Shown piece after piece: positions 14,701 to 58,298 of a stretch of DNA of 64,000 bases (position 1 is the first letter of the stretch; every line of letters starts with the position of its first letter). A model generated the notes under the pieces. The model ran no database searches. It was given only the letters and a program-made list of their open reading frames with translations, and was not told where the DNA came from. The translations under genes and the position numbers were made by a program. The DNA lies in IMG/VR virus record IMGVR_UViG_3300032287_003113, positions 124,001 through 188,000 of that record; one strand, 5' to 3'.

Positions 14701-17700
14701 ATGCACTGGTGCAAGAAAATAGTCCCAGTAGCCAACTACCACAGTCTATTATTAATAAAGCATTTGATAGTCTATGCGAAGAAGATATCGAAGGAAATCC
14801 TGTTCCTGATCCTAGCTTACCGGCTAGCCAGCGTTATGGTATCAGCATACGTCCTAGACAGACCATGTTTGTTGATCTGTATGCTGCACTAGCAAACGTT
14901 ACAACTTTGGTCAATACAAAATTATATTATTATCCGGTTACCCAGCGTAAAGTATTAACTTTACTCAACAGTGAAGAAGCCCCACCAAGCTCACGCACCG
15001 GACAATATGATTTAACCGTTGATACCAAACTTGAATTGTCTTACATTACTACCAATGGCCTGGCCGTTGGATATAAAGTTTTGGTGCTCAATGATCCAAC
15101 CTATCTCACCAAGTGGGCAATATACAATTGGTCGGGCACAGCCTGGGCAGTACCTGCTGCCGGTACACGTCCACTGGGAAATGGATTGTATGGCAACTGG
15201 GTGCAATCATACAAGACCAGTCTTTATTGGAATTACATTGATTGGTATTCGGCCGATTTTGATCCCACCACAACAATCAATATCACTGTGGCAGACAACT
15301 TAGAATTTGGAAAACTAACTCTACAAGCAGATACCTATATCAAGGTTCTCAATGCCGGCAATGACAAATTTGCTATCTACTACATTGATCAAAACTTAAA
15401 TCGTGTTACTGTGGGATTAGAGTCTGGCACTATTCAATTACCTGCAGCTGAAGCATTTATTCCCGGAAAAGAGTTCCGTAAAATTTTACAAAGCCTACAA
15501 ACTGAAATATTCATTGACGACTTGGCCGCAGATTTTAATGAATTATTTTTTACTTTGATCAAGTATGCGTTAGTAGAACAAAAAAATCTTGATTGGGTAT
15601 TTAAAACCAGTTTTATCAGTGCCACGCAATACATTCGTAAACTTGAACAATTTGCCAGCTACATCACCGATAACCAAGACTTTTATCAAAGTTACATCAA
15701 CGAAGTTAAACCATACCGCACAATCCTGCGTGAGTTCAACATCAACTATCAACGAGACGACGAATTTGGCGGCGACATAACTGACTTTGATTTAGCACCA
15801 TATTGGGACAGCAACATCAATGTGTATCGTAGTCCCAGCGGCGAACAGAGTTATGACGCAGGATTATTAAACAACCGTGTTTATTACGACTGGAAAAACA
15901 ATTATGCCTATGGCGTAGTTGACATCGTGGTTGGCGCAGGCGGCACTGGGTATGTGACAGCTCCACAGATCATTATATCAGGCGGTGGAGGCACTGGTGC
16001 CAATGCTGTGGCACAAATAAACGGGCTTGGCGAACTGGCCAACGTCACCGTTGTCAATGCCGGCACCGGTTACACCAGCAGTCCCGCAGTTATTATCAAC
16101 GGCACCGGTACAGGTGCAGTGGCCACCGCTGTATTACGCAATGTGTTTGACGGCAACGATCAAGGACACAATGTGGTTCGCAGTATTAAAACCAGTATTA
16201 AATTTGATAGATTGACCTATGATATCAAGCGACCCGCACAATGGGCAAACACCATTGCAGAATCAACTGGATTAACCAACACCAACGCAGCAGTTATGTG
16301 GGATGAAGTTACAGCAGGTCAGGTGATAGCTGCAAATACCGTTATAAATCTTGGTGGAGAATTATATCAATTATCAACTGTGCCGCACACAGTCAGTGCC
16401 AACGTTGATTTCCCGCTGGCCAATGTATCGTCAATCAATGCTGGAATATTGCCAACAGCCAACGATCGTATTGTGGCCTACAACGGAAATGTTGATCTAA
16501 GAGCCAGTGCTGAAGGAATGGATTACCCGGGTGTCATAGTTGATGGCAGCACATACTTTGCATATGATACCGTCACCGAATGGACAGCAAACACTGACGT
16601 TGCCACAGATACACAAATTTCATACAACGGAAATGTTTACATTGTGACAGGAAATGTGTATGCCGGATATTTCGCCAACATTGTAGCCAATGTCACACAG
16701 GTCAGTGGAGAAAAAATTGACGCCATAATCCAAAGTAGATTTGCTGACAATCTAGGTTTAGACTCTGGTAACATTTATGTGGATGGCGGCGAGTATGTTG
16801 ATAGATTCAGCAGCCATGCTCCAGAAGAGCTAGTTCCTGGACACATGTTTGACAGCCTAAATCTAAAAGTATTTTCAAATACAGCACCTGCAACCAATGA
16901 ATATGCATTTAGATTGTTTGACAACATGAGTGAAGATCACGCTTTTTATAGAATCAGTGATGCATACACAACCACGCTGTCTAGAGATTTGCTAATTGCC
17001 GATGACAAGATATTTGTAACTGATGGTACACGTTTACCAAACCCCAATAGAGATGCAGGCATTCCCGGTGTGGTTTTTGTCAATGGTGAAAAAATTAGCT
17101 ACTATAGAAACTATGCTCAAGAAACAATAACCGCCTGGGCAGCAAATGCCACGATCCCAACAGATACCTTAACATCATTCAACGGAAATGTTTATCTAAC
17201 ACTGGGTAATGTGTACGCACCAAATACTCCTTGGACGGCAAACACAACCTTTGCTGCCAATAGTTATGTGTACTTCAGCGGTAACAGTTATCGGATTACC
17301 GGAAATGTTAACGCACCATACTTTGCCAACATTAGTGCCAATACTGCATTGATATATAACAATGAAAATTCAGGATTTGCCACGATAAGTTCTAATGTTG
17401 CATTGATTGCCAATACCGCCAATGTACTAGGGCAGATACGTCGAGCCACCGACGGAACTGCACCCAACGGTCTAAACACTACACCGTGGACCACTAACAT
17501 AGTACTACCTACCGGTACATATATCACATACAATAGCAACACTTATGTGACCACTGGAAATGTTTACGGATTTAATATACCGTGGAGATCCAATATTGTG
17601 TTGGCTGCAAACACCTATTTCTTTTATGGATCCAATGTGTATCAGGTGTCCAGTAATGTTGGCGCCAATGTATACGGTGTTAGTTTTGCCAACATCAGTG

Positions 17701-18311
17701 CAAATGCAAATGTAAAATACACCGGACGCATAGACTCGGGGTATGCGAGTATAGAATCTAATGTTCGATTGTTATACACAGGCACAAATAACATACGACA
17801 TCTTGCTAACACTAGAGTAGTAGACGCCAGTGAACAACAAACTATACCGGATATTGTGGTCAGTAATACCAATATAGTTGCAACTACAGCAGTTAATACA
17901 ACATCCAATGTCTCATTGAGATTGCGACTAAACGGTAATATCACTGCCAACATTGGCGATTATATTTTAACAAATATTGCCAATTTACGCTTGTTAGAAA
18001 CAGTGACAACTGCATCAAACATAGCAGTATTGCCACACACAGGAAATATTTTTGCAGGTAATGCTAATGCAATTTCCGTCGTTAGCAGAATTACAGGAAA
18101 TGCATCAGCTACCACAGCCCGAGTGATGTATGCCAATGTGTTAGGACAAGTAAGCAGCGTTGGTAATGTGACTGTGTCAGCCAATACTTATGTAACACAA
18201 AGTAGCATTTGGTACGGAAATGTCACAAATGCGTTCTACGGAAATACTCTTGCCAACAGCACTACAGCACAAGCTTCATTCTTGATGGCATCACCAGGAT
18301 ACACACCATGA
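5739..18311 (+). CDS. very large (4190 aa) baseplate-associated virion protein with beta-propeller and CBM-like repeats
   Basis: Single uninterrupted ORF following gp6 (TAATG overlap); FG-GAP-like repeats, 'GGTGY..AP...I.GGGGTGA' repeats typical of T4-like wedge proteins, W-x-A-x-T repeats. Confidence 0.75.
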   Translation: MAIVNTINFLPRIFRTPTNQRFLGATMDHLTSDAINTPVNGYIGRTFAPTYKPGDNYVPESTDLRKNYQLEPSAVVTDSNGEITFNTGYIDLLQNIKNYGGLTDNQQRLFGSEMYSWDGHFDYDKFVNYYNYYWLPDGPDFVPIYGNQAPYTADYTVVRNGAVGGYTFTGKGYQPNTQLTLVRGGVYTFTINQPGHDFWIQRSPGVNGIDPNIPTVSTRDVYGVTNNGASTGTVTFRVPLYNAQDFYILMPIKSSVDAATTLKYIDIQNRLLSNFLNQYPDGIDGINNQLQNKTLIFIGNDEDDTNWTTPAVSPAYTSLDVASIRPGDIINDATRVKTWKINLVAVDSAATDFIIQLSPETTILAREKVFISSGKTYASQKFWLNDNLAYNVEPAITANTDRLYYQDSSNPGFVGEIRIINNTSDTIEVDTEIVGRVGYTSPNGVVFTNGLKIQFDSLVTPASYYKFEYVNYSTWLTALNAMDATVTGTSGGAVAYKDEQLVGEWNGTTGYRIREWYVEGVGTAINLVPVGQTTVPEAYGYLLDTTPDYITINRGSRDRNPWARSNRWFHKDVIAATADYNNTTENYGLNLPGRRPIIEFDSDLQLFNFGRQAKNSVDLVTFEETDAFGITIPATRVEGQITAVVDGITLAPGHRVVFANDYDLNVKNKIWEVTVIEGLGGQNYINLIATDDNPVLAGENVLVTEGDNAGKTYYFDGEDWFVSQSKSSINQMPLFDLVDAAGYSFSDTTVYPGSTFVGNKIFNYNVGTGNNDTVLGFPLSYQNFNNIGDIVFKNHYTTDSFTYTSDTNTGATQTIACSTGYLIKNTNLTTQEKLNSWVPGAEDSSQYQLFTKFFDGRVLDINGVNRAFVQVDVLPATTDTIPHLKVYKNNMLLTATVDYELTTYGMYNIVIFLSDPAVGDKLDVAIFSDTASKLAHYEVPKNLIQNPLNENFSTIALGQIRTHYNKLLENTAVSNRPIQDTYLKQQNGTLNQHSAPLVYAMTFLNDPMLNFVNGIDLAKKEYSRFKNKFISLCSTLSGLNYNDPVTGVDTILQNINSVKNSSFPWYYSDMVPQGGNYTTITYTVLNERQTNYEIGNIFNPVELSNRAVLIWHNGVQLTLGKDYEFSPTVPAVIFSISFAINDTIVIRDYFDTDGSFVPETPSKLGLYPKSEPLIYQDTTYQTPVNVIRGHDGSVMPAFGDFRDNYILELEKRIYNNIKADYTKNIINLYDIVPGRFRTTEYTRDEFVQILSRNFLQWSGTNNVDYTTNSWYDANNSWTWNYEKFTDTVDDKPLQGSWRAIYNYWYDTDQPNRAPWEMLGFGFEPAWWETRYGPAPYTRGNFTLWEDLEAGYVWNNGDPYTDTRFARPGLTDFIPVDSAGNLLPPTDINIVKQYNLTAGGNNYVIGQEGPVETAWIRSSDYPFAVQMAIAMAKPASYFGTQYDTSRFYVSEITGQFSSATNEKINPADLKINGDTRNGTVQRTSGYINWIADVIKNVGIDPIEKISSYLENLSVKLNYKVGGFTDKNILTVTAEQTTPGAKRAGVIIPDSNYDVYLNKSIPVSVVTYSAVIVQRTNVGYSVVGYNTNDPFFTILPSVANNKAETITVGDVSAKLYQDTTNRTISVPYGTTYSNIQQLSDFLISYERYLESVGFVFDQFDKDLQEVKNFRTSVKEFLYWSQQGWEVGTILVLNPTTDRLLLKTSGTVVDEITNTLNSGRILDQNFLPIKSGNFNIVRTENFAFGNQFGITTLNGTGICFASLNLVQFEHVLVFDNESDFGDIIYVPSQGVRQYRLSLSGAKTGAWTGALSASGYMYNTTNVSGWTAGTDYQVGDIVTFNNNYYTALNSIPATTKFNLTEWAQIQESDLKTGLLPSLGLLAQQSENIYNVDRPPDNETLQLFSAGLIGFRPRDYLTDLGIGTATQTKFYQGLIKEKGTLNSITALTKGNFDNVSGNIAIFEEWGFKVGDYGDLDGNQFKEFVLDQSVFNTNPVAFTLGNTYSAGNIIVNLQANANLTISNVYNSSNLSNTSTAIYSNRDKSFYINDLPTAGYVHVDDTDLTIFNINEYNQNPDVGIGSKIWTAKDTGNNWNVYRVTETDISATTLTYVLDDYAQLLFTDKHSFQVGDLLVLKGFQVAYFDNSILENFSTNYDNIYKIVDVVNQLTVTVQLKDTAALSNLIATSPVVSEAAVYKLVSSKVPTVTAIDGLLPLHGWIDNDRIWVDTATTDAGWGVYTFNQAWPNTASGNLTANTVTANDRFGSQVTISTTGKYFYSSNPAQKQVQVFANVAGNYSANITISNSEAKFGSVLESQGNLLAVAAAGNVYVYRQNDTTTANTMAIPWVPNAFPTLGTTWTANTVIAINTQISNGSNTYITTGNVYGATFANIVSNTRAVSFIPVNSIISYLSNIYVTTANVCPANVFLVTTAEKFASITSNVRLIDVSAGNVQLLQTITTGNMVGNISSVAMSADMKQIYIGGNDRVEAYTTTNGNWANVKYTWANAVTGTGAFGNVVKTDTNGGRILVGAPTATNTYDQNGNVYYYTANLTTNAITLTQTLSSEYKNQGTQFGYQIGADSTAANVFIGAPGSLGTDKFYGVVEHWTHDGNVYVRAGNVSRPRDQSGAFGTTVSVSSDAKFVAVGSRGSASEETTVFDNSDTVIDNNSTKFIDSIVASGSVYVFESLMNQSNIADVVYSFTQELETGRYAQLESGDNFGAAVAVAPGLLLASAPESDLASGVVYTFNNLTNTPSWQLTRSQLPQVDIDSINRSFIYNKSNNNLIAPLDIVDPAKGKILSGVASDIDYRLDHDPATYNAGTQDTYQDYHWGPAQVGRIWWNLDNLRYTNYEQDSLIYRLNHWGDRFPESKVEIYEWIESSVLPSEFVASGESGVPLHPDDSAYSTYGYVDQSGAVRVKYYFWVALRDQANTSAGKQNSIVAITAAIENPQNQNIPYATVLRNDTIALYNVKNLLVGKNSVLHLGSQSSQAGLIHSEYALVQENSPSSQLPQSIINKAFDSLCEEDIEGNPVPDPSLPASQRYGISIRPRQTMFVDLYAALANVTTLVNTKLYYYPVTQRKVLTLLNSEEAPPSSRTGQYDLTVDTKLELSYITTNGLAVGYKVLVLNDPTYLTKWAIYNWSGTAWAVPAAGTRPLGNGLYGNWVQSYKTSLYWNYIDWYSADFDPTTTINITVADNLEFGKLTLQADTYIKVLNAGNDKFAIYYIDQNLNRVTVGLESGTIQLPAAEAFIPGKEFRKILQSLQTEIFIDDLAADFNELFFTLIKYALVEQKNLDWVFKTSFISATQYIRKLEQFASYITDNQDFYQSYINEVKPYRTILREFNINYQRDDEFGGDITDFDLAPYWDSNINVYRSPSGEQSYDAGLLNNRVYYDWKNNYAYGVVDIVVGAGGTGYVTAPQIIISGGGGTGANAVAQINGLGELANVTVVNAGTGYTSSPAVIINGTGTGAVATAVLRNVFDGNDQGHNVVRSIKTSIKFDRLTYDIKRPAQWANTIAESTGLTNTNAAVMWDEVTAGQVIAANTVINLGGELYQLSTVPHTVSANVDFPLANVSSINAGILPTANDRIVAYNGNVDLRASAEGMDYPGVIVDGSTYFAYDTVTEWTANTDVATDTQISYNGNVYIVTGNVYAGYFANIVANVTQVSGEKIDAIIQSRFADNLGLDSGNIYVDGGEYVDRFSSHAPEELVPGHMFDSLNLKVFSNTAPATNEYAFRLFDNMSEDHAFYRISDAYTTTLSRDLLIADDKIFVTDGTRLPNPNRDAGIPGVVFVNGEKISYYRNYAQETITAWAANATIPTDTLTSFNGNVYLTLGNVYAPNTPWTANTTFAANSYVYFSGNSYRITGNVNAPYFANISANTALIYNNENSGFATISSNVALIANTANVLGQIRRATDGTAPNGLNTTPWTTNIVLPTGTYITYNSNTYVTTGNVYGFNIPWRSNIVLAANTYFFYGSNVYQVSSNVGANVYGVSFANISANANVKYTGRIDSGYASIESNVRLLYTGTNNIRHLANTRVVDASEQQTIPDIVVSNTNIVATTAVNTTSNVSLRLRLNGNITANIGDYILTNIANLRLLETVTTASNIAVLPHTGNIFAGNANAISVVSRITGNASATTARVMYANVLGQVSSVGNVTVSANTYVTQSSIWYGNVTNAFYGNTLANSTTAQASFLMASPGYTP
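12498..13955 (+). repeat. FG-GAP-like beta-propeller repeats within the giant protein
   Basis: DRFGSQVTIS, KFGSVLE, AFGNVV..RILVGAP, QFGYQI..VFIGAPG, AFGTTVSVS..VAVGS, DNFGAAVAV..LASAP. Confidence 0.6.
16581..17705 (+). repeat. CBM5/12-like W-x-A-N-T...Y-x-G-N-V-Y protein repeats
   Basis: Copies start at about 16581, 17136, 17232, 17487 and 17583; further copies at about 12789 and 11202 (WTAGTDYQVGDIVTFNNNYY). Confidence 0.6.
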
Positions 18312-18317
18312 TAAATA
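18311..18317 (+). promoter_or_regulatory. T4-like late promoter ATAAATA
   Basis: GATAAATA overlaps the stop of the giant ORF; AGAGGA RBS and an in-frame GTG follow at 18350. Confidence 0.55.
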
Positions 18318-18349
18318 CTGATAACAAACAAAATTTAGAGGAAACAGCA

Positions 18350-18994
18350 GTGGAAAATACACAAAAACAGCCAGACGATACGTCCGGCATTTATGTCCGT
18401 GGGCATATCAAAATATTTGATCCAGAATCTGGTGAAGTTTACATCGACAAGTCCAACGCTATTCACTACGAAAACTTTAGTCGTGCATTGGCTAGTAGTG
18501 TGGCCAACAAAGGACAGAATTTTATCTACGAAATGGTGTTAGGCAACGGCGGAACCAGTGTTGACACCACTGGTATTATCACATATCTTCCCACAAATAC
18601 GCTAGGACAAAGCTCAAACCTATACAATCCCACATTTAGTAAAATTGTAGACAACACCGCGGTTGCTAACCTTGACCCAGTCAACAACAAAATGACTGTG
18701 GCACACATTCCTGGTACAATTTACACAGATATTTTAGTTACCTGTCTGTTGGACTACGGCGAGCCAAGTGGGCAGGCCCTGTTTGACAACAGTCAAAACT
18801 TAAACAGCGAATATGTGTTTGACGAACTAGGACTTCGTGGTCGTAGTACAGATGGTACTACAGGTTTAACGTCGACTGGTTTGTTACTAACACATGTGGT
18901 ATTCCACCCTGTACAAAAATCCCTAAACAGATTAATTCAAATAGACTATACTGTGCGTATTCAAACACTGACTAACCTTAGCTCGATAGGATAA
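18350..18994 (+). CDS. conserved baseplate/tail-fibre attachment protein (start probably GTG 18350, alternative ATG 18308)
   Basis: 'GHIKIFD...NAIHYEN...GNGGT...FDELGL...LLTHVVFHPVQKSLNRLIQIDYTVRIQ'; lies between wedge and fibre genes. Confidence 0.55.
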   Translation: MENTQKQPDDTSGIYVRGHIKIFDPESGEVYIDKSNAIHYENFSRALASSVANKGQNFIYEMVLGNGGTSVDTTGIITYLPTNTLGQSSNLYNPTFSKIVDNTAVANLDPVNNKMTVAHIPGTIYTDILVTCLLDYGEPSGQALFDNSQNLNSEYVFDELGLRGRSTDGTTGLTSTGLLLTHVVFHPVQKSLNRLIQIDYTVRIQTLTNLSSIG

Positions 18995-18998
18995 CGCC

Positions 18999-20576
18999 AT
19001 GAGTTATATTGTTAATAAAACGGATGGGTCAGTGCTAACAACACTACTGGATGGTACCACCAACACAGAAACTGGCTTGACCTTAATAGGTCGTAATTAC
19101 ACCAGTTACGGTGAAATTCAAAATGAAAATTTTGTTAGGTTGTTGGAAAATTTTGCCAGCACATTGCCACCTGGACAAAGTGTGGGCTTTGCTCCAATTG
19201 CCGGACAGCTTTGGTGGGACACCACAAACCAGCGTCTGCGTGTTTATAATGGAACAGAATTTGTCAACGTCAGCGAAAGAACCGTTGGCGCAACAGCACC
19301 TGCCACAGTTAAAACCGGTGACCAGTGGTGGGATACCGCAGACCAACAGTTAAAACTTTACAGCGGATCTGCTTGGACTGTAATAAATCCTCCATACTCG
19401 GCTTCACAAGGCAAAACTGGATCGCTAGTTGAAACAGTAACAGATACCAGCTTGAGTTCTCATACTGTGGTCAACACTTACACCAATAACAATTTGATTG
19501 CGGTGGCCAGTTACGATCCTGCATTCCAAACTGGTGCATACAGTCAGTTTAGTTTTATTCGTCCTGGCATTACCCTGGCCTCCAATGTGATGTTGCATGG
19601 TAATGTGATGAACAGTTTACAACTGGGTGGCAGTTGGGCCAATGCTTTCCCACGCACCACTGCAAGAACAGATTTTTTATCAGATCTTGGCGTTGTGGGC
19701 AATTTGGTAATTGCCAATGCCAATGTTTTCTACAGTAGCAATGCATTTGTAGTAACCAATTCTGTACTAGGCGGCAACGTTGACATTTATGTCAATACCA
19801 CTCTAGGCAATACTCGTGCATTTAGAATCAACGGTGCCACTGGCATGATCACTGTGTCTGCCAATCCAACCAACAATTTGGGTGTAGTGACCAAAACATA
19901 CGCCGATGATATTCAAGTGGCATTAAACACCAGCTTGGTAGCCAACATTGCCAATGTCAATGCCAACGTTGCTCAGTTACGTAGCGATACATTTACGGCA
20001 TTAACCACCAACGTCAGCATACTAACATCTGCTACCAATCAATTGCGTACAGATACCAATGCCAATGTTGCGGCATTAGACACAGCATTCAAAGCCAATG
20101 TGGCCTCCATTGATTCTAATCTAGCCAACAAGACCAGTCGTATTGCGAGTCTTGAAAGCGACATAGTTCTCAAGTCTACCATTGCCAGTCCTGCATTTAC
20201 AGGTACACCAACTGCTACAACACCAACAGCCAGTGATAACAGTACACGTATTGCAACCACAGCCTATGTGGATGCAGCCGATCTAATTGGTACCAACTAT
20301 ACCAATACCGTAGTCAATGCTCTAGCAATCACAACAGCAGCAAATTTAGCTGTTGGCTTATCCAGTAAATCTAATATTGTCAGTCCATCATTTTCTGGAA
20401 ACGCAACATCAGAGACCCCGGTATCAACAGATAATAGTACAAAGATTGCAACCACAGCATTTGTTCGTGGTGCCATTACTGGCAATTTAACTCGTTGGCA
20501 AGGCAGTCGCTATACTGTAAGTACCAGCGGTCCCACTGGCGGAGATGATGGAGATTTTTGGTTCCAGATCGGCTAG
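18999..20576 (+). CDS. tail fibre protein 1 (shared N-terminal anchor domain; adaptor-like C-terminus)
   Basis: N-terminus 'YIVNKTDG...LTLIGRNY..YGE..NENF..LLENFA...GQLWWD' shared with two downstream genes; two 'DNST.IATTA(Y/F)V' fibre motifs; ends in 'PTGGDDGDFWFQ'. Confidence 0.75.
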   Translation: MSYIVNKTDGSVLTTLLDGTTNTETGLTLIGRNYTSYGEIQNENFVRLLENFASTLPPGQSVGFAPIAGQLWWDTTNQRLRVYNGTEFVNVSERTVGATAPATVKTGDQWWDTADQQLKLYSGSAWTVINPPYSASQGKTGSLVETVTDTSLSSHTVVNTYTNNNLIAVASYDPAFQTGAYSQFSFIRPGITLASNVMLHGNVMNSLQLGGSWANAFPRTTARTDFLSDLGVVGNLVIANANVFYSSNAFVVTNSVLGGNVDIYVNTTLGNTRAFRINGATGMITVSANPTNNLGVVTKTYADDIQVALNTSLVANIANVNANVAQLRSDTFTALTTNVSILTSATNQLRTDTNANVAALDTAFKANVASIDSNLANKTSRIASLESDIVLKSTIASPAFTGTPTATTPTASDNSTRIATTAYVDAADLIGTNYTNTVVNALAITTAANLAVGLSSKSNIVSPSFSGNATSETPVSTDNSTKIATTAFVRGAITGNLTRWQGSRYTVSTSGPTGGDDGDFWFQIG

Positions 20577-20579
20577 ACT

Positions 20580-21926
20580 ATGGCACGAGGAATCTTTCAA
20601 AAAATCAATGGTATATGGAAGCGGGTAATTGCTCCGTCGTATAAAGATAATGGCACGTGGAAATCCGTGCAAAAAGGATTTGTTAAACGAGACGGAGTTT
20701 GGCAACAGTTCTACCCCAGCGATGTCATTGCTGATATATTGGTAGTAGGTGGAGGCGGCGGTGGTGGAGTTGGTTATGGATATGAAGGCGGTGGTGGTGG
20801 CGGAGCCGGCGGAGTTGTATTCCAGGAAGATCAAACTTTATCGGTACTAAACGGCAACAACTACACAATTAAAGTTGGCACAGGTGGCGGCGCCAATGAA
20901 TCAGGCACATACAGCCTATTTGGCACAGGTGGTATCACATTAACAAACACAGTAACTCCGGCTGTGTACGCAGGCACATACCCAGTGTACAATGGATTTT
21001 TAAACACATACGGAGTCTGGACTCATCCAGGCATGGCTGGTGCTGCCGTTGGCACAGTATCAGCTACATACACCACACAGATACAAACAGGTCAAGATTA
21101 CACTTTACGAGTCAGTGCCGACAATGCTATAGATGTTAGCATCGACGGCAACGCAGTTGGGTCAAATGGCGATTGGGGAACATATAACGATTATCGTGTA
21201 ACATTAGCATTTGGCGTTCATACTATAGTTTGTACAGCAACAAACTGGGGCGGCCCTGCCATGTTTGCTGCAGCACTATATGATCCACAGGGACGAGTGG
21301 TTTGGGATACTCGAGCACCTATAAATTACCCTGTTGTTGTTGTAGAAAGCGGAATCACTGCATTGGGTGGCGGTAATGGCGGTTGGGGGACTTCCAATCA
21401 GACAGCAGGCTCGGGAGCCAGCGGTGGCGGCGGGTGCGGATTTGTGTATACACACGAAGGTGGCGCAGGATATCCAGGACAAGGATATGAAGGCGGTACA
21501 GGAATATGGCAAGGATTTGGCCAAGCTGGGGGTGGCGGTGGCGGTGGATTTGCTGGCGCCGGACAAGGTAGTAACGGATTTGCTGGCGGAGCAGGCGGAC
21601 CCGGAATTACTATATTGGGATTTAGTGTAGGCGGTGGCGGTGGTGGTGGCTATGGAAATCGAAGCCCATATGGTAGTGGTCCAGGCGGTCCGGGAGGCTC
21701 CGGCGGCGGAGGCGATGGAAACGGTAATAATGCACAAGCCAATACTGGTGGCGGCGGTGGTGGTGGTCTGCACGGGGGTCAAACATCGGGTGGGCGTGGT
21801 GGCGATGGTATTGTAGTGGTACAATATGCCGGTGCACCAGCATTTACAGGTGGTACAATTACCTATGATAACGGAATAACCACACATGTTTTCACTTCTA
21901 GCGGTTCGCTAACAGCATTAGGATAA
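20580..21926 (+). CDS. glycine-rich distal fibre protein with an inserted beta-sandwich (lectin-like) domain
   Basis: N-terminal 'K.NG.WK' docking repeats; 'ILVVGGGGGGG', 'GGGGGAGGV', 'GGRGGDGIVVVQY', 'THVFTSSGSL'; insert containing 'SADNAIDVSIDG...ATNWGGPAMFAAAL'. Confidence 0.65.
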   Translation: MARGIFQKINGIWKRVIAPSYKDNGTWKSVQKGFVKRDGVWQQFYPSDVIADILVVGGGGGGGVGYGYEGGGGGGAGGVVFQEDQTLSVLNGNNYTIKVGTGGGANESGTYSLFGTGGITLTNTVTPAVYAGTYPVYNGFLNTYGVWTHPGMAGAAVGTVSATYTTQIQTGQDYTLRVSADNAIDVSIDGNAVGSNGDWGTYNDYRVTLAFGVHTIVCTATNWGGPAMFAAALYDPQGRVVWDTRAPINYPVVVVESGITALGGGNGGWGTSNQTAGSGASGGGGCGFVYTHEGGAGYPGQGYEGGTGIWQGFGQAGGGGGGGFAGAGQGSNGFAGGAGGPGITILGFSVGGGGGGGYGNRSPYGSGPGGPGGSGGGGDGNGNNAQANTGGGGGGGLHGGQTSGGRGGDGIVVVQYAGAPAFTGGTITYDNGITTHVFTSSGSLTALG

Positions 21927-21934
21927 TATTGGCG

Positions 21935-21941
21935 ATAAATA
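21935..21941 (+). promoter_or_regulatory. T4-like late promoter ATAAATA
   Basis: GATAAATA in the AT-rich gap before fibre gene 21968. Confidence 0.55.
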
Positions 21942-21967
21942 AGTTAATATAATTAAGAAATTACAAT

Positions 21968-23956
21968 ATGCCATATCAAATTAACAAAACAGACGGAACG
22001 GTATTAACAACAATTGCCGATGGAACTAGAGATACTACTACTAGTTTGAGTCTAGCTGGCCCAAATTTTGTTGGATATGGAGAATACTTGAATGAAAATC
22101 TAGTAGGTTTACTAGAAAATTTTGCCAGTAACACAGCCCCAAGTTCGGTCAATTTGCAGGGACAGTTATGGTACGATAAGAATGCACAGATTCTAAAAGT
22201 TTTCACACCACAAGGTTATGTGGCAGTTTCGGGTGTTACCAATTCTGGAAGTCAACCAGCCTTGGGCAAAAATGGCGATATTTGGTTTAACCAGTCCACT
22301 GAGCAGATGTATGTTTACGACAACAGTGGCAGCAATGCAGGTTTTAAAATTGTAGGTCCTGCATATACCAAACAACAAGGTGTCAGTGGTGCAGTTCCCG
22401 TTACTGTAGAAGATGGTTCAATCAGTGGCACATATCATAATATTTTAAAACTACAGTATGGCAACGTAACCTATGCCACTGTCAGTGCAGATTCTGCATT
22501 CTTACCAACACCGGCTATTCCAGGTTTTAGTTTTGTCAATCCTGGAATCACATTCAGTAGCAATGTAAATAATCCCACTGTCAATGCCAATGTTATAACC
22601 GGTGGCGCCAGTGGTTTGGTCATGGTAGATATCGTCAATCGTCAATTGCAAGGAACCTTACACGGCAACGTGGTAGCCACAACATTGAGTGGTACATTAA
22701 CTGGCAATGTCATTGGTAATTTAACTGGTAATGTAGTGGCCACAACGCTACGCGGTAACTTAACTGGTAATCTTTCTGCAACAGTTACACACTCTACAAA
22801 CTTTAGCAGCGGTAATGCTGTAATCACTGGCGGCTATGTACAAAATTTAGCTAACGTATCGGCCGCAGTTGGCACAATAACAACATTATCTAGTACTACC
22901 GGTCAAGCAACCAACTTCAGTTCAAGTAATGTTTTGGTTACTGGTGGTGCAGTTACAGGACTACTTAACTTTTCAACCTTGGTTGGTCAAAGCACAAACT
23001 TCAGTAGTGGTAACATACGTGTTAGTGGTGGTAGTGCAACCGGACTGCTTAATTTTTCAACCTCGTATGGCCAAAGCACAAACTTTAGCAGCGGTAATAT
23101 TTTGGTCACTGGTGGTAGTGCAACAGATTTAACTAATTTTTCAACCACTACAGGACAAAGTACAAACTTTAGTTCAAGCAATATTTTGGTCACCGGTGGT
23201 AGTGCAACAGGACTGACTGCATACAGTGGCACAATCGGACAAGCAACCAATTTTAGTAGTAGCAACGTGTTAGTCACGGGTGGTAATGTGTCAGGAGTAA
23301 CTGGTGTCAATAACACCTTTACATCGGCCAATTTGGTTAATTCGGTAGCAACAACAAAAACAGCCGGTGACTCAACCACAGCCGTAGCCACAACAGCATT
23401 TGTACACGCAGTTTTACCCACTGGTATAATTGTGATGTGGAACAGCACAGCAGCCAGCATACCTGCAGGATGGCAGTTATGTAACGGTAGTAATGGAACT
23501 CCAGACCTGCGTGGACAATTTGTTGTGGGCGCCGGTGGCTCGTACACACCAGGGGATTCAGGCGGAGCAGCATCAGTGACGTTAAGTGCCAACGCTATGC
23601 CAATACACACGCATGAACTAACCGGATCACTAACTACTGGTTCAGCAGGATCACACTCGCATACAGCATCTGTGACTGATCCCGGACATAATCATTCGTT
23701 GCCAATTCAATACAGTGGTTCGGGTGGTAATTTCCCAGATTTAAACGGATTTTCAGGAACTCCTGTTTCTAGCCCATCACCTACAGGAACCGCTGTTACA
23801 AATATCAGCGTAAGTGTAGCTTCAGTTATAGATCACACACATTCATTGACATTGAGCGGAAATACTCAAACCGCCGGTGGTTCAGGTGGAACCACACAGC
23901 CGCATGAAAATCGTCCTCCGTACTACGCCCTATGTTACATCCAGAAAATGTACTAA
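21968..23956 (+). CDS. tail fibre protein 2 with 28-aa repeats, tail-collar domain and HxH tip motifs
   Basis: Shared N-terminal anchor; collar 'LPTGIIVMWN...IPAGWQLCNGSNGTPDLRGQFVVGAG'; HTH/HSH/HNH/HTH motifs; ends in 'HENRPPYYALCYIQK'. Confidence 0.8.
   Translation: MPYQINKTDGTVLTTIADGTRDTTTSLSLAGPNFVGYGEYLNENLVGLLENFASNTAPSSVNLQGQLWYDKNAQILKVFTPQGYVAVSGVTNSGSQPALGKNGDIWFNQSTEQMYVYDNSGSNAGFKIVGPAYTKQQGVSGAVPVTVEDGSISGTYHNILKLQYGNVTYATVSADSAFLPTPAIPGFSFVNPGITFSSNVNNPTVNANVITGGASGLVMVDIVNRQLQGTLHGNVVATTLSGTLTGNVIGNLTGNVVATTLRGNLTGNLSATVTHSTNFSSGNAVITGGYVQNLANVSAAVGTITTLSSTTGQATNFSSSNVLVTGGAVTGLLNFSTLVGQSTNFSSGNIRVSGGSATGLLNFSTSYGQSTNFSSGNILVTGGSATDLTNFSTTTGQSTNFSSSNILVTGGSATGLTAYSGTIGQATNFSSSNVLVTGGNVSGVTGVNNTFTSANLVNSVATTKTAGDSTTAVATTAFVHAVLPTGIIVMWNSTAASIPAGWQLCNGSNGTPDLRGQFVVGAGGSYTPGDSGGAASVTLSANAMPIHTHELTGSLTTGSAGSHSHTASVTDPGHNHSLPIQYSGSGGNFPDLNGFSGTPVSSPSPTGTAVTNISVSVASVIDHTHSLTLSGNTQTAGGSGGTTQPHENRPPYYALCYIQKMY
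22901..23305 (+). repeat. 84-bp (28-aa) tandem repeat, about 5 copies
   Basis: Units begin at 22901, 22985, 23069, 23153 and 23237; consensus GQ(S/A)TNFSS(G/S)N(I/V)LVTGGSATGLxNFST. Confidence 0.9.
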
Positions 23957-23959
23957 ATA
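23953..23959 (+). promoter_or_regulatory. T4-like late promoter CTAAATA
   Basis: Overlaps the stop of fibre 2, 25 nt before the fibre 3 ATG. Confidence 0.45.
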
Positions 23960-23983
23960 CTAAGATAATCAAAGCGAAAAAAC

Positions 23984-25978
23984 ATGGCATACACAATTAA
24001 TTTAACCAATGGTACAGAAATAGTCGCAGGCGGTCTTTCCGACGGCTCTGTAGATACCAGTGCCACCAGTTTAACTCTAATTGGTAAAAACTACGCTGGC
24101 TACGGCGAAATTCTAAACGAAAATCTAGTGCACCTACTGGAAAATTTTGCCAGTCCAAATTCGGGTGCCACTTCAGGCCCACCCAATCCTTTAGCCGGAC
24201 AGCTTTGGTGGGACACAACCAATAACATTTTACGTGTGTATTCGGGCACAAGCTGGAAAATTTCAACTGGTGCTACCAGTGCTCCATTTTCAAGCCCTCC
24301 GGGAGATTTAAGTGCTCTAGGCGGGGACTTATGGTTTGATAGTACCAATCAACAGTTAAAAATATACTCTGGAGCCAATTGGGTAACAGTAGGTCCTGCT
24401 GCAACACCGGTCACAGGTGACACAGGTGCTTTCCCGAGTGTAATGACAGATACACTGGGCGGTAGCCATATTGTTACACAGATTAGAATTGCTGGTGTTC
24501 CTTATATGATCGTCAGCAAAGACACTTTTCCCAGTGCCCTAGCAGGATTCAGCACAGTTAGAGCTGGTATTAATTTTAGTACTATTGCCAGTCCAGTTAT
24601 GGGCATCAACACACAAGATATCAATGCCACGGCCAGCACCTTGGTCCAACGCGACTCATCTGCAGGCATCACTGGTGCTGGAATTACAGGTACAATATTG
24701 ACTGGTACCAACTACATTACTTCGCCAACTGTTATTGCGACAACCTCATTCAATGGAAATATTGCCGGCAATGTTACCGCAGACCTAGTAGAAGCAAGCA
24801 CTATTCGTGCGTCTGGTATCAGTGCTACGGGAGGATACACAGGCACACTATTGACCGCCAGCCAACCAAACGTGACCGGACTTGGCACTCTTACTGCACT
24901 CAATGTTAATGGCAACGTGGCCATAACTGCTGCAAGTGCCATACTCAACGGCAGTCCAATTGCTAGAATTGGCGATCCTGCCAACTTTAGTTCTATCAAC
25001 AGCACACCAATTGGCAATGCTGTGCCCAGTACCGGAGCATTTACCACACTAACAGCATCGGCCCTGACCACAACAGCGGCATTGACATCCAATGGTACTA
25101 TTATTGCCAGTACTGTACAGGCTGGAACCATTGGTAATTCAGGCGCAGTACTGTTTGGCACATTGAACTCATCAAGTGCAAGCCAGCCTAACCTTACCAC
25201 AGCATCAGCTTTGGTCAGCGTGGGCAACGTTACTACTGGTACTTGGAGTGCTACCACAGTACAACCACAATATGGTGGCACAGGTGTCAATAATGGCACA
25301 CGAACAATTACCCTGGGCGGTAGCTTAACAACCACAGCCGCTTGGACGCTTAACCAAAACGTTGAAATCAATTCTAGTCCAACCTTGCGTGGAACAAACT
25401 TTAACAGCATTCCAAATGGTGCTTTGATCAACAGCGGTATTGTTATTAACGGAATCAGTGTAGCCCTAGGCGGTACCTATAGTCAAACTTTAGTATCGAG
25501 TGTTACAGGAACAGCCAATCAAGTTATTACCAGTGCGGCATCAGGAAACATTACTCTAAGCACACCACAAGATATTGGAACAGCGAGTAACGTACGATTT
25601 GGTAGTTTGGGCATTGGTACAGCAGCGTCAGGAACCACCGGTGAAATACGTGCCACAAACAATATTGTTGCTTACTACTCAGACGATAGACTAAAAACAC
25701 GACTGGGTCGAATTGAAAACGCCCTGGACAAGATATGTAGTTTGGAAGGTTTCTACTATGAAGCCAATCAAACTGCACAAGATTTGGGTTACGCTGTTCA
25801 ACGTGAAATGGGTATCAGTGCCCAAAGCACACAATTGGTAGCACCCGAAATTGTTAAACCGGCTCCGATCGACGACCGGTACTTGACTGTGCAATACGAG
25901 CGTTTTGCTCCGTTGATCATCGAAGCTATCAAAGAGTTACGTGTTGAAATTGATGCTTTGAAAGCAAAAATTAAATAA
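23984..25978 (+). CDS. tail fibre protein 3 with C-terminal intramolecular chaperone (peptidase S74-like) domain
   Basis: Shared N-terminal anchor; C-terminal 'YSDDRLKT....IENALDKICSLEGFYY...GISAQ...APEIV...LIIEAIKEL'. Confidence 0.85.
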   Translation: MAYTINLTNGTEIVAGGLSDGSVDTSATSLTLIGKNYAGYGEILNENLVHLLENFASPNSGATSGPPNPLAGQLWWDTTNNILRVYSGTSWKISTGATSAPFSSPPGDLSALGGDLWFDSTNQQLKIYSGANWVTVGPAATPVTGDTGAFPSVMTDTLGGSHIVTQIRIAGVPYMIVSKDTFPSALAGFSTVRAGINFSTIASPVMGINTQDINATASTLVQRDSSAGITGAGITGTILTGTNYITSPTVIATTSFNGNIAGNVTADLVEASTIRASGISATGGYTGTLLTASQPNVTGLGTLTALNVNGNVAITAASAILNGSPIARIGDPANFSSINSTPIGNAVPSTGAFTTLTASALTTTAALTSNGTIIASTVQAGTIGNSGAVLFGTLNSSSASQPNLTTASALVSVGNVTTGTWSATTVQPQYGGTGVNNGTRTITLGGSLTTTAAWTLNQNVEINSSPTLRGTNFNSIPNGALINSGIVINGISVALGGTYSQTLVSSVTGTANQVITSAASGNITLSTPQDIGTASNVRFGSLGIGTAASGTTGEIRATNNIVAYYSDDRLKTRLGRIENALDKICSLEGFYYEANQTAQDLGYAVQREMGISAQSTQLVAPEIVKPAPIDDRYLTVQYERFAPLIIEAIKELRVEIDALKAKIK

Positions 25979-29003: not shown

Positions 29004-29352
29004 AGCATTACGGTTGGTTGAAGAGTACGATCGTCAACGTCCCAAATTAATTACAGAGTTTAGAATATACTATGATGAAGAAGGTCGAGTTACCATGTAC
29101 TGCGAGACTGATCATCCTGCTGATACCAATTACATTGTGATAGACAATCCTGATGTGTTTTTTAAAACCAATACCGGTAGGTTGCGTGTAATCGATGGAG
29201 AATTAAAGATTATCGACACACGACCAACACGAACACATCTTGCAAAAAGCACTACAGGACAACCAGTAGTACGAGGCATGGCTGCACTGGCATTAACGCC
29301 CACAGAACAATATCAAGACATAGAATATTATGACAGAACGACACTTAATTGA
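28984..29352 (+). CDS. hypothetical protein
   Basis: 122-aa ORF overlapping both neighbours. Confidence 0.6.
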   Translation: MSPEFLEALRLVEEYDRQRPKLITEFRIYYDEEGRVTMYCETDHPADTNYIVIDNPDVFFKTNTGRLRVIDGELKIIDTRPTRTHLAKSTTGQPVVRGMAALALTPTEQYQDIEYYDRTTLN

Positions 29353-30229
29353 TGTAGCAGACTTAGACTGCATTTATTTAACATATGATGAACCAAACAA
29401 AGAACAGAATTGGATTCGGATCCAAAACATGGTTCCTTGGGCCAAACGAGTGGACGGAGTCAAAGGCAGTGACGCCGCTCACAAAGCGGCTGCAGACGCC
29501 AGCGATACCGATCGCTTTATTCTCATTGATGGTGACAACGTTCCAGATCCTGAATTTTTCAATTTACAACTGGCCCTTGATGCTACCAATGACTCTTGCG
29601 TTTTTCGTTGGCGGGCTCGCAATGCCGTTAACGGTCTAATGTACGGTAACGGCGGCATGAGTTCTTGGACTCGAGAGTTTATCTATGCCATGCGTACACA
29701 CGAAGCAACTGATGGCTCTGCAGAGAATGATGTAGAATTTTGTTTTTATCCCAACTACTGGGCCATGAATGATTGCTACTCAACTACATACCCCAATGCA
29801 ACACCTTATCAAGCATGGAGAGCCGGATTCCGTGAAGGAGTAAAGATGGCTCTAGATCGTGGTGCGAAAATAACAGTGGCAGAATTTGAAAGCCGAGTTA
29901 ATACCCGTAACTATGATAACTTGTGTGTTTGGCAAAGTGTGGGTGCAGATGCAGATAACGGATTCTGGGCTATTTACGGCGCCAGACTTGGCACATATAT
30001 GATCATGTTAGAAGGTTGGAACCATAAGCAAGTACAAGATTTTGACACACTTGCCATGTTATGGAAGTCATTTGAGCAAGATGGACCAGATCAATGCCGC
30101 GGAGTTGGTGACGCATTACGTACACGTTTAGGTTTGCCTATTGTGGACATGGATCCTGAAGAAAGCCGATTCTTCAAACATCATTATAAATCAATGTTTA
30201 AAAATCAAGGTCCCATGGTCAGAGAATGA
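29330..30229 (+). CDS. GT-A fold glycosyltransferase
   Basis: 'DCIYLTYDEPN...KRVDGVKGSDAAHKAAA...FILIDGDN' (DxD), 'NGLMYGNGG', 'AWRAGFREGVK'. Confidence 0.65.
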   Translation: MTERHLIDVADLDCIYLTYDEPNKEQNWIRIQNMVPWAKRVDGVKGSDAAHKAAADASDTDRFILIDGDNVPDPEFFNLQLALDATNDSCVFRWRARNAVNGLMYGNGGMSSWTREFIYAMRTHEATDGSAENDVEFCFYPNYWAMNDCYSTTYPNATPYQAWRAGFREGVKMALDRGAKITVAEFESRVNTRNYDNLCVWQSVGADADNGFWAIYGARLGTYMIMLEGWNHKQVQDFDTLAMLWKSFEQDGPDQCRGVGDALRTRLGLPIVDMDPEESRFFKHHYKSMFKNQGPMVRE

Positions 30230-46380: not shown

Positions 46381-46391
46381 AGGAAAACAAA

Positions 46392-57719: not shown

Positions 57720-57743
57720 TCTGTTCGCTCCTGTATTATATAT

Positions 57744-57772
57744 ATTATACATTTAATTGATTTTTTGGTCAA
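57744..57772 (-). promoter_or_regulatory. sigma70-type early promoter, conserved-spacer family
   Basis: TTGACC-AAAAAATCAATTAAATG-TATAAT. Confidence 0.75.
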
Positions 57773-58281: not shown

Positions 58282-58298
58282 CCTGTGACAGCAACCTT

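What the first reader, a model, noticed from the sequence alone, without database searches (positions are those of the whole stretch)
16581..25978. Exposed virion domains are saturated with [G/A/S]-N-[V/I/T], a candidate non-canonical N-glycosylation sequon
Seen (hand count): in the last ~390 aa of the 4190-aa protein (17136-18308), 40 of 58 Asn are preceded by G, A or S, and 31 of those 40 are followed by V, I or T. In the first ~150 aa of the same protein only 2 of 15 Asn are preceded by G/A/S. The motif is also dense at about 12470-13600 and in fibres 1-3 (GNV, ANV, GNL, SNV, ANI, GNI). Known: the chlorovirus PBCV-1 capsid protein Vp54 is N-glycosylated by virus-encoded enzymes at atypical (A/G)-N-T-X-T and A-N-I-P-G sites. 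The usual beta-turn bias is N-G, not G-N. Inference: these may be acceptor sites selected for the adjacent GT cluster.
Basis: partly seen in the sequence, partly recalled or inferred. Interest (0 to 1): 0.82.

Follow-up and report, generated by a model that had tools for sequence, protein, structure and literature searches.

The report
Asparagine-rich sugar-binding modules on phage fibre
The excess of small-Asn-Val/Ile/Thr triplets is real, but it mostly marks conserved positions of repeated chitin-binding-like (CBM5/12) modules and other beta-rich adhesin domains at the outer end of a giant tail protein of an uncultured freshwater jumbo phage, and nothing found here shows that these asparagines carry sugars.

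Summary
Observation confirmed. The 4190-aa ORF holds 78 [GAS]N[VIT] against 21.8 expected (z 13). The excess is Asn-specific, sits at protein rather than DNA level, and is confined to the distal half.

What it is: 29 of the 78 triplets lie in seven copies of a ~42-aa module (consensus WTANT..YNGN.Y..TGNVY..FANI.AN). By sequence (1ED7, E 2.4e-4) and predicted fold (Foldseek prob 1.0) it is a CBM5/12-type carbohydrate-binding hairpin. The rest lie in FG-GAP-like blades, a conserved C-terminal beta domain, 28-aa fibre repeats and a probable coiled coil.

The family is rare and restricted to a clade of freshwater jumbo myoviruses. T4 fibres and the PA5oct orthologue show no excess.

Interpretation untested, and I judge it unlikely. 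NxS/T and the four-residue PBCV-1 pattern are at chance. No glycosyltransferase passes any HMM threshold; there is one weak GT2-like ORF. The neighbouring cluster is mainly five twitch-type radical SAM paralogues plus sugar-nucleotide enzymes. Co-occurrence is clade-wide synteny and therefore uninformative. Asn exposure could not be measured.

The parts
5739..18311 (+). Giant virion (baseplate-associated) protein, 4190 aa. The Asn-triplet excess is confined to its distal half.
   Evidence: ORF. phrog_10938 'virion structural protein' E 0. It follows the baseplate-wedge gene, as in PA5oct, whose 3857-aa orthologue is annotated as seen by ESI-MS/MS. Triplet profile.
11202..11270 (+). Canonical-looking CBM_5_12 hairpin (aa 1822-1844), not Asn-rich.
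   Evidence: Pfam PF02839 scores 27.1 bits as a piece (cut-off 26.2) and 20.9 bits in the whole protein. It also gives a weak hit to the module HMM (E 0.0023).
12789..13049 (+). Two Asn-rich CBM5/12-like modules (aa 2351-2392 and 2394-2437).
   Evidence: Iterated module HMM, E 9e-17 and 7e-9.
13056..14138 (+). FG-GAP-like beta-propeller blades. GNVY replaces the usual G-a-a-Y strand; 9 triplets vs 2.0 expected.
   Evidence: Pfam FG-GAP_2 E 7.7e-6, 3 stretches. Sequence. z 5.4.
16581..16706 (+). Asn-rich CBM5/12-like module (aa 3615-3656); this is the start coordinate of the finding.
   Evidence: Module HMM E 1e-18.
17136..17357 (+). Tandem pair of Asn-rich CBM5/12-like modules (aa 3800-3829 and 3832-3873).
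   Evidence: Module HMM. AF2 model pLDDT 76, about 90 in the second module. Foldseek prob 1.0 to Vibrio CBM12 tandem domains; rmsd 2.2 A and TM 0.70 to 1ED7.
17487..17714 (+). Second tandem pair of modules (aa 3917-3944 and 3949-3992).
   Evidence: Module HMM E 4e-9 and 2e-10.
17778..18308 (+). Conserved C-terminal beta domain (aa 4014-4190; motifs ITANIGDYI and GNVT). 12 triplets vs 2.1 expected.
   Evidence: Alignment A1 with N67, G69, G132 and G138 conserved. Most homologues end with it. AF2 pLDDT 66, all-beta, no PDB fold match. z 7.3.
18999..20576 (+). Tail fibre 1. ANI/ANV triplets cluster in a probable coiled-coil stretch (aa 315-375).
   Evidence: PHROG tail-fibre hits. 11 vs 4.0. Sequence.
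21968..23956 (+). Tail fibre 3 with collar-like C-terminus. About six 28-aa repeats each carry S-[GS]-N-[IV]; 9-aa T-G-N-V repeats are also present.
   Evidence: PHROG tail-fibre hit. 15 vs 5.4. TRF period 84 nt x 3.5 copies at 22926-23218. Sequence.
29330..30229 (+). Best glycosyltransferase candidate: a divergent GT-A/GT2-like ORF with an invariant hydrophobic-strand-DGD motif.
   Evidence: Pfam Glycos_transf_2 E 0.082 and Glyco_tranf_2_3 E 0.094, both sub-threshold. An atlas cluster auto-named GT2-like scores 0.99. D67-G68-D69 are invariant in A5. A profile against PDB sequences found no GT.
32953..41217 (+). Radical SAM array: one short rSAM, one ORF of unknown function (33786-34667), and five tandem paralogues of the twitch-domain rSAM family NF033640 (34667-41217).
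   Evidence: Pfam Radical_SAM/SPASM. NCBIfam N_Twi_rSAM 306-398 bits. Alignment A2 with invariant CxxxCxxC.
44366..52238 (.). Sugar-nucleotide-type enzymes interspersed with ORFs of unknown function: NodU-like carbamoyltransferase (+), kinase plus nucleotidyltransferase (+), DegT aminotransferase (-), NAD epimerase/dehydratase (-).
   Evidence: Pfam and NCBIfam.

Best explanation
The triplet excess is the sequence signature of the adhesin-like distal half of a giant baseplate-attached virion protein, and of two neighbouring fibres, in an uncultured freshwater jumbo myovirus. That half is built from repeated small beta modules. Seven are CBM5/12-type carbohydrate-binding hairpins extended by a T-G-N-V-Y...F-A-N-I...A-N tail. 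The others are FG-GAP-like propeller blades and a conserved C-terminal beta domain. In these modules Asn occupies fixed positions directly after a tight turn (G/S/A) and directly before a beta strand that starts with a beta-branched residue. Inferred: the Asn side chains cap turns and strand starts through side-chain-to-backbone hydrogen bonds, and some of them, lying on the same face as the conserved Tyr/Trp, help to bind host-surface polysaccharide. On this reading the motif is structural or ligand-binding and the Asn are unmodified. Shown here: the repeat architecture, the CBM5/12 relationship, the positional conservation, and the secondary-structure context. Inferred: the hydrogen-bonding and sugar-binding roles.
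For: The module consensus is WTANTVIPTGTLISYNGNTYLVTGNVYAPTFANISANVSLVY, with 316 instances in the fetched loci and hits and 7 in this ORF holding 29 of its 78 triplets. W1 is 100% conserved, N4 95%, N18 86%, Y20 89%, G24/N25/V26 89% across unique instances; N25 is invariant and N4/N18/N37 are at least 90% conserved in A3. The module profile's best PDB hit is the B. circulans chitinase A1 chitin-binding domain 1ED7 (E 2.4e-4), where WQVNTAYTAGQLVTYNGKTY aligns with WtANtviatgslisysGNvY; Vibrio deacetylase CBM12 domains follow. The AF2 supermodule (pLDDT 76) matches Vibrio tandem CBM12 (Foldseek prob 1.0), 1ED7 (rmsd 2.2 A, TM 0.70), ChiB and ChiC binding domains, and tail fibres of phages Milano, 7-7-1 and A-1(L). 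In that model 6 of 9 motif Asn sit at or just before a coil-to-strand boundary. At 89% and 73% identity the motif Asn are kept 100% and 95% of the time, against 92% and 73% for other Asn, which is as well conserved as Trp; when lost in more distant relatives they mostly become S, D, T or G, the usual turn and cap residues. The homologous family is uniformly enriched and consists of the C-ends of giant ORFs longer than 3500 aa.
Against: The excess persists outside the CBM-like modules and in unrelated contexts (propeller blades, C-terminal domain, a coiled-coil-like fibre segment), so one fold does not explain it all. At 37-62% identity, motif Asn are little better conserved than other Asn, and 12-27 new triplets appear at other aligned sites while the overall excess is kept. 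That pattern would also fit selection for the motif as such, although alignments of repeats at that distance are unreliable. Side-chain burial, hydrogen bonding and carbohydrate binding were not measured. The C-terminal domain model is of low confidence (pLDDT 66).
Confidence: 0.6

Rival explanations
1. One reading: [GAS]-N-[VIT] is a non-canonical N-glycosylation sequon. Phage-encoded enzymes from the downstream cluster attach an unusual sugar to exposed Asn of the giant protein and the fibres.
For: The excess is Asn-specific and spans several folds. It is absent from T4 gp34-37 and from the PA5oct orthologue. Motif density is maintained despite positional turnover in distant relatives. Sugar-nucleotide-type genes (DegT, epimerase/dehydratase, carbamoyltransferase, nucleotidyltransferase) and a weak GT2-like ORF lie downstream in conserved synteny. 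Chlorovirus capsid N-glycans sit at NTGT, NTET, NTAT, NIPG and NVAT (PMC9614988).
Against: No glycosyltransferase passes the threshold in Pfam, PHROGs or NCBIfam, and no GT41/NGT or STT3/PglB-type enzyme is found. NxS/T and the four-residue PBCV-1 pattern are at chance; the excess is N-V/N-I followed by Tyr. Many motif Asn are core-conserved positions of a fold that is shared with bacterial chitin-binding domains. No N-glycosylated phage turned up in my searches: the phage virion glycosylation they did turn up is described as glycans at the C-termini of mycobacteriophage capsid and tail-tube subunits (PMC12619734 citing Freeman 2023); that these glycans are O-linked is my own recollection. The 29330 family is 65-100% identical across the clade, far more conserved than its putative substrates.
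Confidence: 0.08
2. Buried asparagine ladders: the Asn stack at equivalent positions of successive coils or repeats in beta-solenoid or triple-beta-helix fibres and at trimer interfaces. They would be internal structural residues.
For: Fibre 3 has about six 28-aa repeats with S-[GS]-N-[IV] in register. Fibre 1 has ANV/ANI spaced within a probable trimeric coiled coil.
Against: The best model of the giant protein's modules is a set of CBM-type hairpins, not a solenoid. Only monomers could be modelled, and no coordinates were available.
Confidence: 0.15
3. The neighbouring radical SAM array (five twitch-type paralogues) modifies these Asn-rich beta repeats post-translationally. The recalled analogy is rSAM processing of Asn-rich G-N-I/A-N-V repeats in proteusin-type peptides.
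For: Five paralogous NF033640 rSAM genes plus one more lie about 15-23 kb downstream, in conserved synteny with the fibre block. The resemblance to proteusin cores is from memory only.
Against: There is no evidence that this rSAM family acts on proteins. It sits among sugar-nucleotide-type enzymes, which suggests small-molecule or sugar chemistry. More than 581 relatives exist in viral contigs; whether those phages carry the Asn-rich modules was not examined (within +/-10 kb of the 80 best only 5 of 1319 ORFs reach z > 5, but the giant ORF lies further away). A 4190-aa structural protein would be an unusual substrate.
Confidence: 0.03
4. Neutral by-product: the excess reflects internal duplication of a few ancestral units together with an Asn-rich composition, with no selection on the triplet.
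For: 37% of the triplets lie in duplicated modules, and the fibre 3 triplets lie in tandem repeats. Ala codon GCC is over-used at position -1 (22 of 34, against 36% overall), which hints at shared ancestry of the copies.
Against: The excess remains after removing all modules (z 7.5). There is no DNA-level repeat in the giant ORF between 16000 and 18311. Codons are otherwise diverse. Motif Asn are more conserved than other Asn at short distances.
Confidence: 0.1

Closest known systems
CBM5/CBM12 chitin-binding domains (Pfam PF02839), e.g. B. circulans chitinase A1 ChBD (PDB 1ED7) and the tandem CBM12 of Vibrio chitin oligosaccharide deacetylase (4NYU, 8YFP)
   Same: The W-x-x-N-T...G-x-x-[VI]-x-Y-[NS]-G-x-x-Y hairpin core, the conserved Trp and Tyr, a size of about 40-45 aa, the tandem arrangement, and the predicted fold.
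   Different: Asn replaces the variable residue after the turn Gly. A second conserved half (T-G-N-V-Y-A-x-x-F-A-N-I-x-A-N) has no counterpart in the Pfam match. The modules score below the Pfam gathering threshold (12.9 bits). They sit on a 4190-aa phage virion protein rather than on a secreted glycoside hydrolase. Ligand unknown.
CBM-like modules in phage receptor-binding proteins and tail fibres (Agrobacterium phages Milano 8FQC and 7-7-1 9RKV; cyanophage A-1(L) 8KEC; Oenococcus phage adhesion devices, PMC8540738)
   Same: Small CBM5/12-like beta modules decorate distal tail structures; these are Foldseek hits to the model.
   Different: There is no detectable sequence similarity: tblastn of the C-terminal 401 aa against 50,697 phage records gave nothing. 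The Asn triplets were not looked for in those proteins.
Chlorovirus PBCV-1 Vp54 atypical N-glycosylation (sites NTGT, NTET, NTAT, NIPG; PMC9614988, PMC5408694)
   Same: Asn followed by T/I/V in a virion surface protein of a large freshwater dsDNA virus that encodes sugar-metabolism genes.
   Different: The four-residue chlorovirus context is at chance here. The excess is N-V/N-I-Tyr. This is a bacterial virus, no homologue of a known N-glycosylating enzyme was found, and no glycan evidence exists.
Mycobacteriophage virion glycosylation (Freeman et al. 2023, as cited in PMC12619734)
   Same: Candidate glycan genes lie next to virion structural genes.
   Different: The paper read places those glycans at the C-termini of the capsid and tail-tube subunits; that they are O-linked and made by clearly recognisable glycosyltransferases is my recollection. 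Here the GT assignment is sub-threshold and the proposed acceptor is Asn.

Membership tests
CBM5/12 carbohydrate-binding module | Sequence match to the family profile or to a solved member | tested here: met
   The module profile (A3) hits 1ED7 at E 2.4e-4 and Vibrio CBM12 domains. The Pfam CBM_5_12 match is above cut-off only for aa 1822-1844 as a piece (27.1 vs 26.2 bits); the Asn-rich modules reach 12.9 bits. Membership is therefore as a divergent branch.
CBM5/12 carbohydrate-binding module | Small antiparallel beta hairpin/sheet fold | tested here: met
   AF2 model pLDDT 76 (about 90 in module 2). Foldseek prob 1.0 to Vibrio tandem CBM12; rmsd 1.9-2.2 A over 43-46 residues to 1ED7, 2D49 and ChiB. 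This is a predicted model, not an experimental one.
CBM5/12 carbohydrate-binding module | Conserved aromatic residues (Trp at the start, Tyr in the hairpin) | tested here: met
   W1 100% and Y20 89% across unique module instances.
CBM5/12 carbohydrate-binding module | Binds chitin, cellulose or another polysaccharide | not testable with these tools
   Needs a binding assay or a glycan array.
Protein N-glycosylation system (OST/PglB, HMW1C-type NGT, or chlorovirus-type) | Glycan covalently attached to Asn | not testable with these tools
   Requires MS or a structure of native virions. The phage is uncultured and known only from freshwater metagenomes.
Protein N-glycosylation system (OST/PglB, HMW1C-type NGT, or chlorovirus-type) | A recognisable N-glycosyltransferase encoded nearby | tested here: not met
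   No GT family passes the threshold in Pfam, PHROGs or NCBIfam for the ORFs of at least 150 aa scanned between 26 and 63 kb; a few (for example 30226-30945 and 45838-46380) were run against two of the three libraries. There is only GT2-like at E 0.08 for 29330-30229 and a GT10-like lead at atlas score 0.79 for 31914-32960. A novel enzyme cannot be excluded.
Protein N-glycosylation system (OST/PglB, HMW1C-type NGT, or chlorovirus-type) | Enrichment of a known sequon (NxS/T, or chlorovirus N[TIV]x[TG]) | tested here: not met
   NxS/T is 12 vs 12.4 expected and N[TIV]x[TG] is 4 vs 3.5 in aa 3800-4190.
Protein N-glycosylation system (OST/PglB, HMW1C-type NGT, or chlorovirus-type) | Acceptor Asn solvent-exposed | not testable with these tools
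   Structure prediction returns no coordinates. Secondary structure places the Asn at turn-to-strand boundaries.
Asparagine-ladder beta-solenoid / triple beta-helix fibre | Regular coil-length repeats with Asn in register | tested here: inconclusive
   This holds at sequence level in fibre 3 (28-aa repeats). It does not hold for the giant protein's modules, which model as CBM hairpins. No trimer model was possible.

The most novel reading that the evidence does not exclude
A widespread clade of freshwater jumbo phages N-glycosylates its giant adhesin and tail fibres at [GAS]-N-[VIT] sites. It would use a divergent GT-A enzyme (the 29330-30229 family) and an unusual sugar made by the radical SAM, aminotransferase and carbamoyltransferase cluster. 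I know of no described case of protein N-glycosylation in a bacteriophage, so this would be the first, and it would define a new sequon.
Probability: 0.07. Interest if true: 0.85.

Novelty: new variant of a known kind. Interest (0 to 1): 0.42.

Why it matters
The observation defines a rare, unannotated module family. Only 46 cluster representatives out of 1.8 billion match at E < 1e-3, yet the family is present in at least 80 IMG/VR loci and in lake metagenomes from at least eight studies. These modules form the probable host-recognition end of a giant baseplate protein in an uncultured jumbo-phage clade. Recognising them as Asn-rich CBM5/12-like adhesin modules gives a testable route to the host receptor, probably a polysaccharide, and a handle for annotating giant phage proteins. 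If the minority reading were true, it would be phage protein N-glycosylation with a new sequon, which would matter for phage-host recognition and for glycoengineering. The adjacent array of five twitch-type radical SAM paralogues with sugar-nucleotide enzymes is an unexplained pathway that deserves study in its own right.

Tried and rejected
1. DNA-level cause. TRF finds no repeat in 16000-18311, and Asn and flanking codons are diverse (AAT 48, AAC 30, as elsewhere). Only GCC at position -1 is over-used. Rejected.

2. Generic 'small-polar-beta-branched' periodicity. Only Asn is enriched; S, T, D and Q are not. Rejected.

3. Generic property of fibres. T4 gp34-37 (z -1.1 to 1.2) and the PA5oct giant orthologue (11 vs 13.9) are not enriched. 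Only 5 of 1319 ORFs around rSAM loci reach z > 5. Rejected.

4. Deamidation avoidance as the driver of the +1 V/I preference. The fast-deamidating contexts N-G, N-S and N-A are at expectation (15 vs 15.7). Not supported.

5. Repeats alone. Removing all seven modules leaves z 7.5. Insufficient on its own.

6. Fold assignment of the C-terminal domain. AF2 pLDDT 66 and no PDB match (best E 0.14). Led nowhere.

7. Cultured relatives. Megablast and tblastn of the distal region against 50,697 phage records gave no match.

8. Co-occurrence test. The GT2-like ORF follows the fibre block in 16 of 16 loci that reach far enough, and rSAM or cluster homologues follow it wherever visible.

9. GT confirmation. 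A profile of the 29330 family against PDB sequences gave only chance hits.

10. Gene context of metagenomic homologues. The contigs were too short to be useful.

Full report
**Setting.** The window comes from an uncultured jumbo myovirus; an identical stretch lies on IMG/VR contig 3300032287_003113, 219,879 bp. Near-identical sequence occurs in lake and freshwater metagenomes from at least eight studies, and partly in a metatranscriptome. Its baseplate-wedge protein (2563-5739) is 34-38% identical to those of PA5oct, Atu_ph07 and Rak2-like jumbo phages. The next gene (5739-18311) is an uninterrupted 4190-aa ORF that matches phrog_10938, 'virion structural protein'. The PA5oct gene in the same position (3857 aa) is annotated as detected in virions by ESI-MS/MS. 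Four fibre genes follow at 18999-25978.

- Against composition-preserving shuffles the giant ORF has 78 [GAS]N[VIT] triplets versus 21.8 expected (z 13.1).
- The excess lies at aa ~1950-2700 and 3500-4190. The first 1900 aa show none.
- In the two enriched regions, only Asn among the 20 residues is enriched in the [GAS]_[VIT] frame (z 15.8 and 9.8).
- The effect is not at DNA level. No tandem repeat is found in 16000-18311, and codons are diverse.
- Two of the four fibres are enriched (z 3.7 and 4.5); the other two are not.

**What carries the triplets.** Reading the sequence shows a recurring unit. An iterated HMM gives the consensus WTANTVIPTGTLISYNGNTYLVTGNVYAPTFANISANVSLVY, with 316 instances in the fetched sequences and seven in this ORF. 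Those seven copies hold 29 of the 78 triplets.

Across unique instances, W1 is 100% conserved, N4 95%, N18 86%, Y20 89%, and G24, N25 and V26 89% each. N25 is invariant in alignment A3. The motif Asn are therefore as conserved as the aromatic core.

A profile of the module finds, as its best hit in the PDB, the chitin-binding domain of B. circulans chitinase A1 (1ED7, E 2.4e-4). The alignment pairs WQVNTAYTAGQLVTYNGKTY with WtANtviatgslisysGNvY. CBM12 domains of Vibrio deacetylases come next.

An AF2 model of one tandem pair has pLDDT 76, about 90 in the second module. Its Foldseek matches are:
- the Vibrio tandem CBM12 domains (prob 1.0);
- 1ED7 (rmsd 2.2 A, TM 0.70), and the ChiB and ChiC binding domains;
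- tail fibres of phages Milano, 7-7-1 and A-1(L).

A separate, ordinary CBM_5_12 hairpin at aa 1822-1844 passes the Pfam cut-off when scanned as a piece. It also touches the module HMM. The modules are therefore divergent CBM5/12-type carbohydrate-binding hairpins with a clade-specific Asn-rich extension.

**The other triplets.**
- FG-GAP-like blades: 9 vs 2.0 expected, with GNVY in place of the usual strand.
- A conserved C-terminal beta domain with the motifs ITANIGDYI and GNVT: 12 vs 2.1. Its model is poor and matches nothing.
- 28-aa repeats of fibre 3.
- A probable coiled coil in fibre 1.
- With all seven modules removed, the excess remains at z 7.5.

**Structural context.** In the better model, six of nine motif Asn sit at or just before a coil-to-strand boundary. 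An example is the residue right after the N-G turn in Y-N-G-N-V-Y.

**Evolutionary behaviour.**
- Only 46 representatives among 1.8 billion proteins match the last 401 aa, and nearly all are enriched (z up to 22).
- Eighty IMG/VR loci carry the C-terminal domain, almost always at the end of an ORF longer than 3500 aa.
- At 89% and 73% identity, motif Asn are kept 100% and 95% of the time, against 92% and 73% for other Asn.
- At 37-62% identity the advantage nearly vanishes, and 12-27 new triplets appear elsewhere while the excess persists. Alignments of repeats at that distance are unreliable.
- Lost Asn mostly become S, D, T or G.

**Controls.** T4 gp34-37 and the PA5oct orthologue are not enriched. 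Only 5 of 1319 ORFs around unrelated rSAM loci reach z > 5. The excess is therefore specific to this family and is not a general property of fibres.

**The glycosylation reading.**
The sites are NTGT, NTET, NTAT and NIPG, with NVAT in NY-2A (PMC9614988; PMC5408694).
- Here, however, NxS/T (12 vs 12.4) and N[TIV]x[TG] (4 vs 3.5) are at chance.
- The excess is N-V/N-I (z 6.7), with Tyr at +2.
- Fast-deamidating contexts are at expectation, so chemical stability does not explain the +1 preference either.

**The 'adjacent GT cluster'.** It is not what it was taken for. No glycosyltransferase passes the threshold in Pfam, PHROGs or NCBIfam for the ORFs scanned. What is present:
- five tandem paralogues of the twitch-domain radical SAM family NF033640, plus one further rSAM;
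- three confident DUF6071/SGNH-like proteins, plus a fourth weak hit;
- a NodU-like carbamoyltransferase;
- a kinase plus nucleotidyltransferase;
- a DegT aminotransferase and an NAD epimerase/dehydratase.

This looks like synthesis of an unusual sugar, but its target is unknown. The best GT candidate is 29330-30229. It has Pfam GT2 at E 0.08, an atlas neighbour auto-named GT2-like at 0.99, and an invariant DGD motif after a hydrophobic strand. A profile search against PDB sequences did not confirm it. ORF 31914-32960 has only a GT10-like lead.

**Co-occurrence.** The order giant ORF, fibres, 26020, 27380, 28152, 29330, cluster is conserved. The 29330 homologue is present in 16 of 16 loci that extend far enough, and cluster homologues follow it wherever they are visible.

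**Verdict.** The best-supported explanation (about 0.6) is that the triplets are the conserved turn and strand-cap positions, and possibly the ligand-contact positions, of repeated CBM5/12-like and other beta modules. These modules form the adhesin end of a giant baseplate protein and of two fibres. N-glycosylation remains possible (about 0.07), but it is unsupported and fits the known sequons poorly. Asn exposure, the key structural test, could not be run because no coordinates are returned.

Noticed in passing
window 32953-41217: There are five tandem paralogues (20-28% identical) of the twitch-domain radical SAM family NF033640, plus a sixth short rSAM. More than 581 relatives exist in IMG/VR. 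Function unknown. A paper on marine viral genomes notes T4-like genomes with up to 12 rSAM genes (PMC5332604).
   Followed up: partly
That is far more conserved than the neighbouring fibres. It has an invariant DGD after a hydrophobic strand and only sub-threshold GT2 similarity.
   Followed up: partly
window 22926-23218 (fibre 3, 21968-23956): An 84-nt (28-aa) tandem repeat with 3.5 copies at DNA level and about six at protein level (GQSTNFSS[GS]N[IV]xVxGGSATGLxNFST). 9-aa T-G-N-V repeats lie upstream at 22697-22732.
   Followed up: partly
window 19940-20125 (fibre 1, aa 315-375): ANI/ANV triplets occur inside what reads as a coiled-coil stretch (VANIANVNANVAQLRSD...KANVASIDSNL). This is a different structural context for the same triplet.
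   Followed up: no
window 17064-17135 and 17430-17460; also in P0003, P0006, P0036: Conserved linkers flank the modules: GVVF[IV]NGEKI[ST]YYRNY before them and LGQIRRA[VT]DGT after them. These recur in homologues where the modules appear in shuffled order.
   Followed up: no
window 5739-18311, position -1 of the triplets: Ala codon GCC is used in 22 of 34 motif Ala positions, against 36% of all Ala codons in the ORF.
   Followed up: no
window 20580-21926: Fibre-block protein with a Pfam Gly_rich_2 domain and long poly-Gly runs. It shows no Asn-triplet excess and is present in only 14 of the related loci.
   Followed up: no
window 52235-54397 (-): Thymidylate synthase and dihydrofolate reductase, separated only by a 261-aa ORF of unknown function (53143-53928), sit directly beside the sugar-enzyme genes. 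In T4 td and frd are directly adjacent.
   Followed up: no
window 56475-59408 (-) and 60491-61549 (-): A DUF2201 metallopeptidase/VWA protein lies near a MoxR-like AAA ATPase (about 550 bp apart). A P-loop plus GNAT acetyltransferase fusion lies further on.
   Followed up: no
window 16581-19000: The sequence is held at 49-100% of sampled 31-mers in lake and freshwater metagenomes from at least eight studies, and at 28% in one metatranscriptome. The phage is widespread and transcribed.
   Followed up: no
L062 10804-12504, L071 10528-12462, L072 10831-12093: Some relatives carry an extra 420-645-aa ORF directly after the giant ORF. It has an even stronger triplet excess (z 4-12).
   Followed up: no
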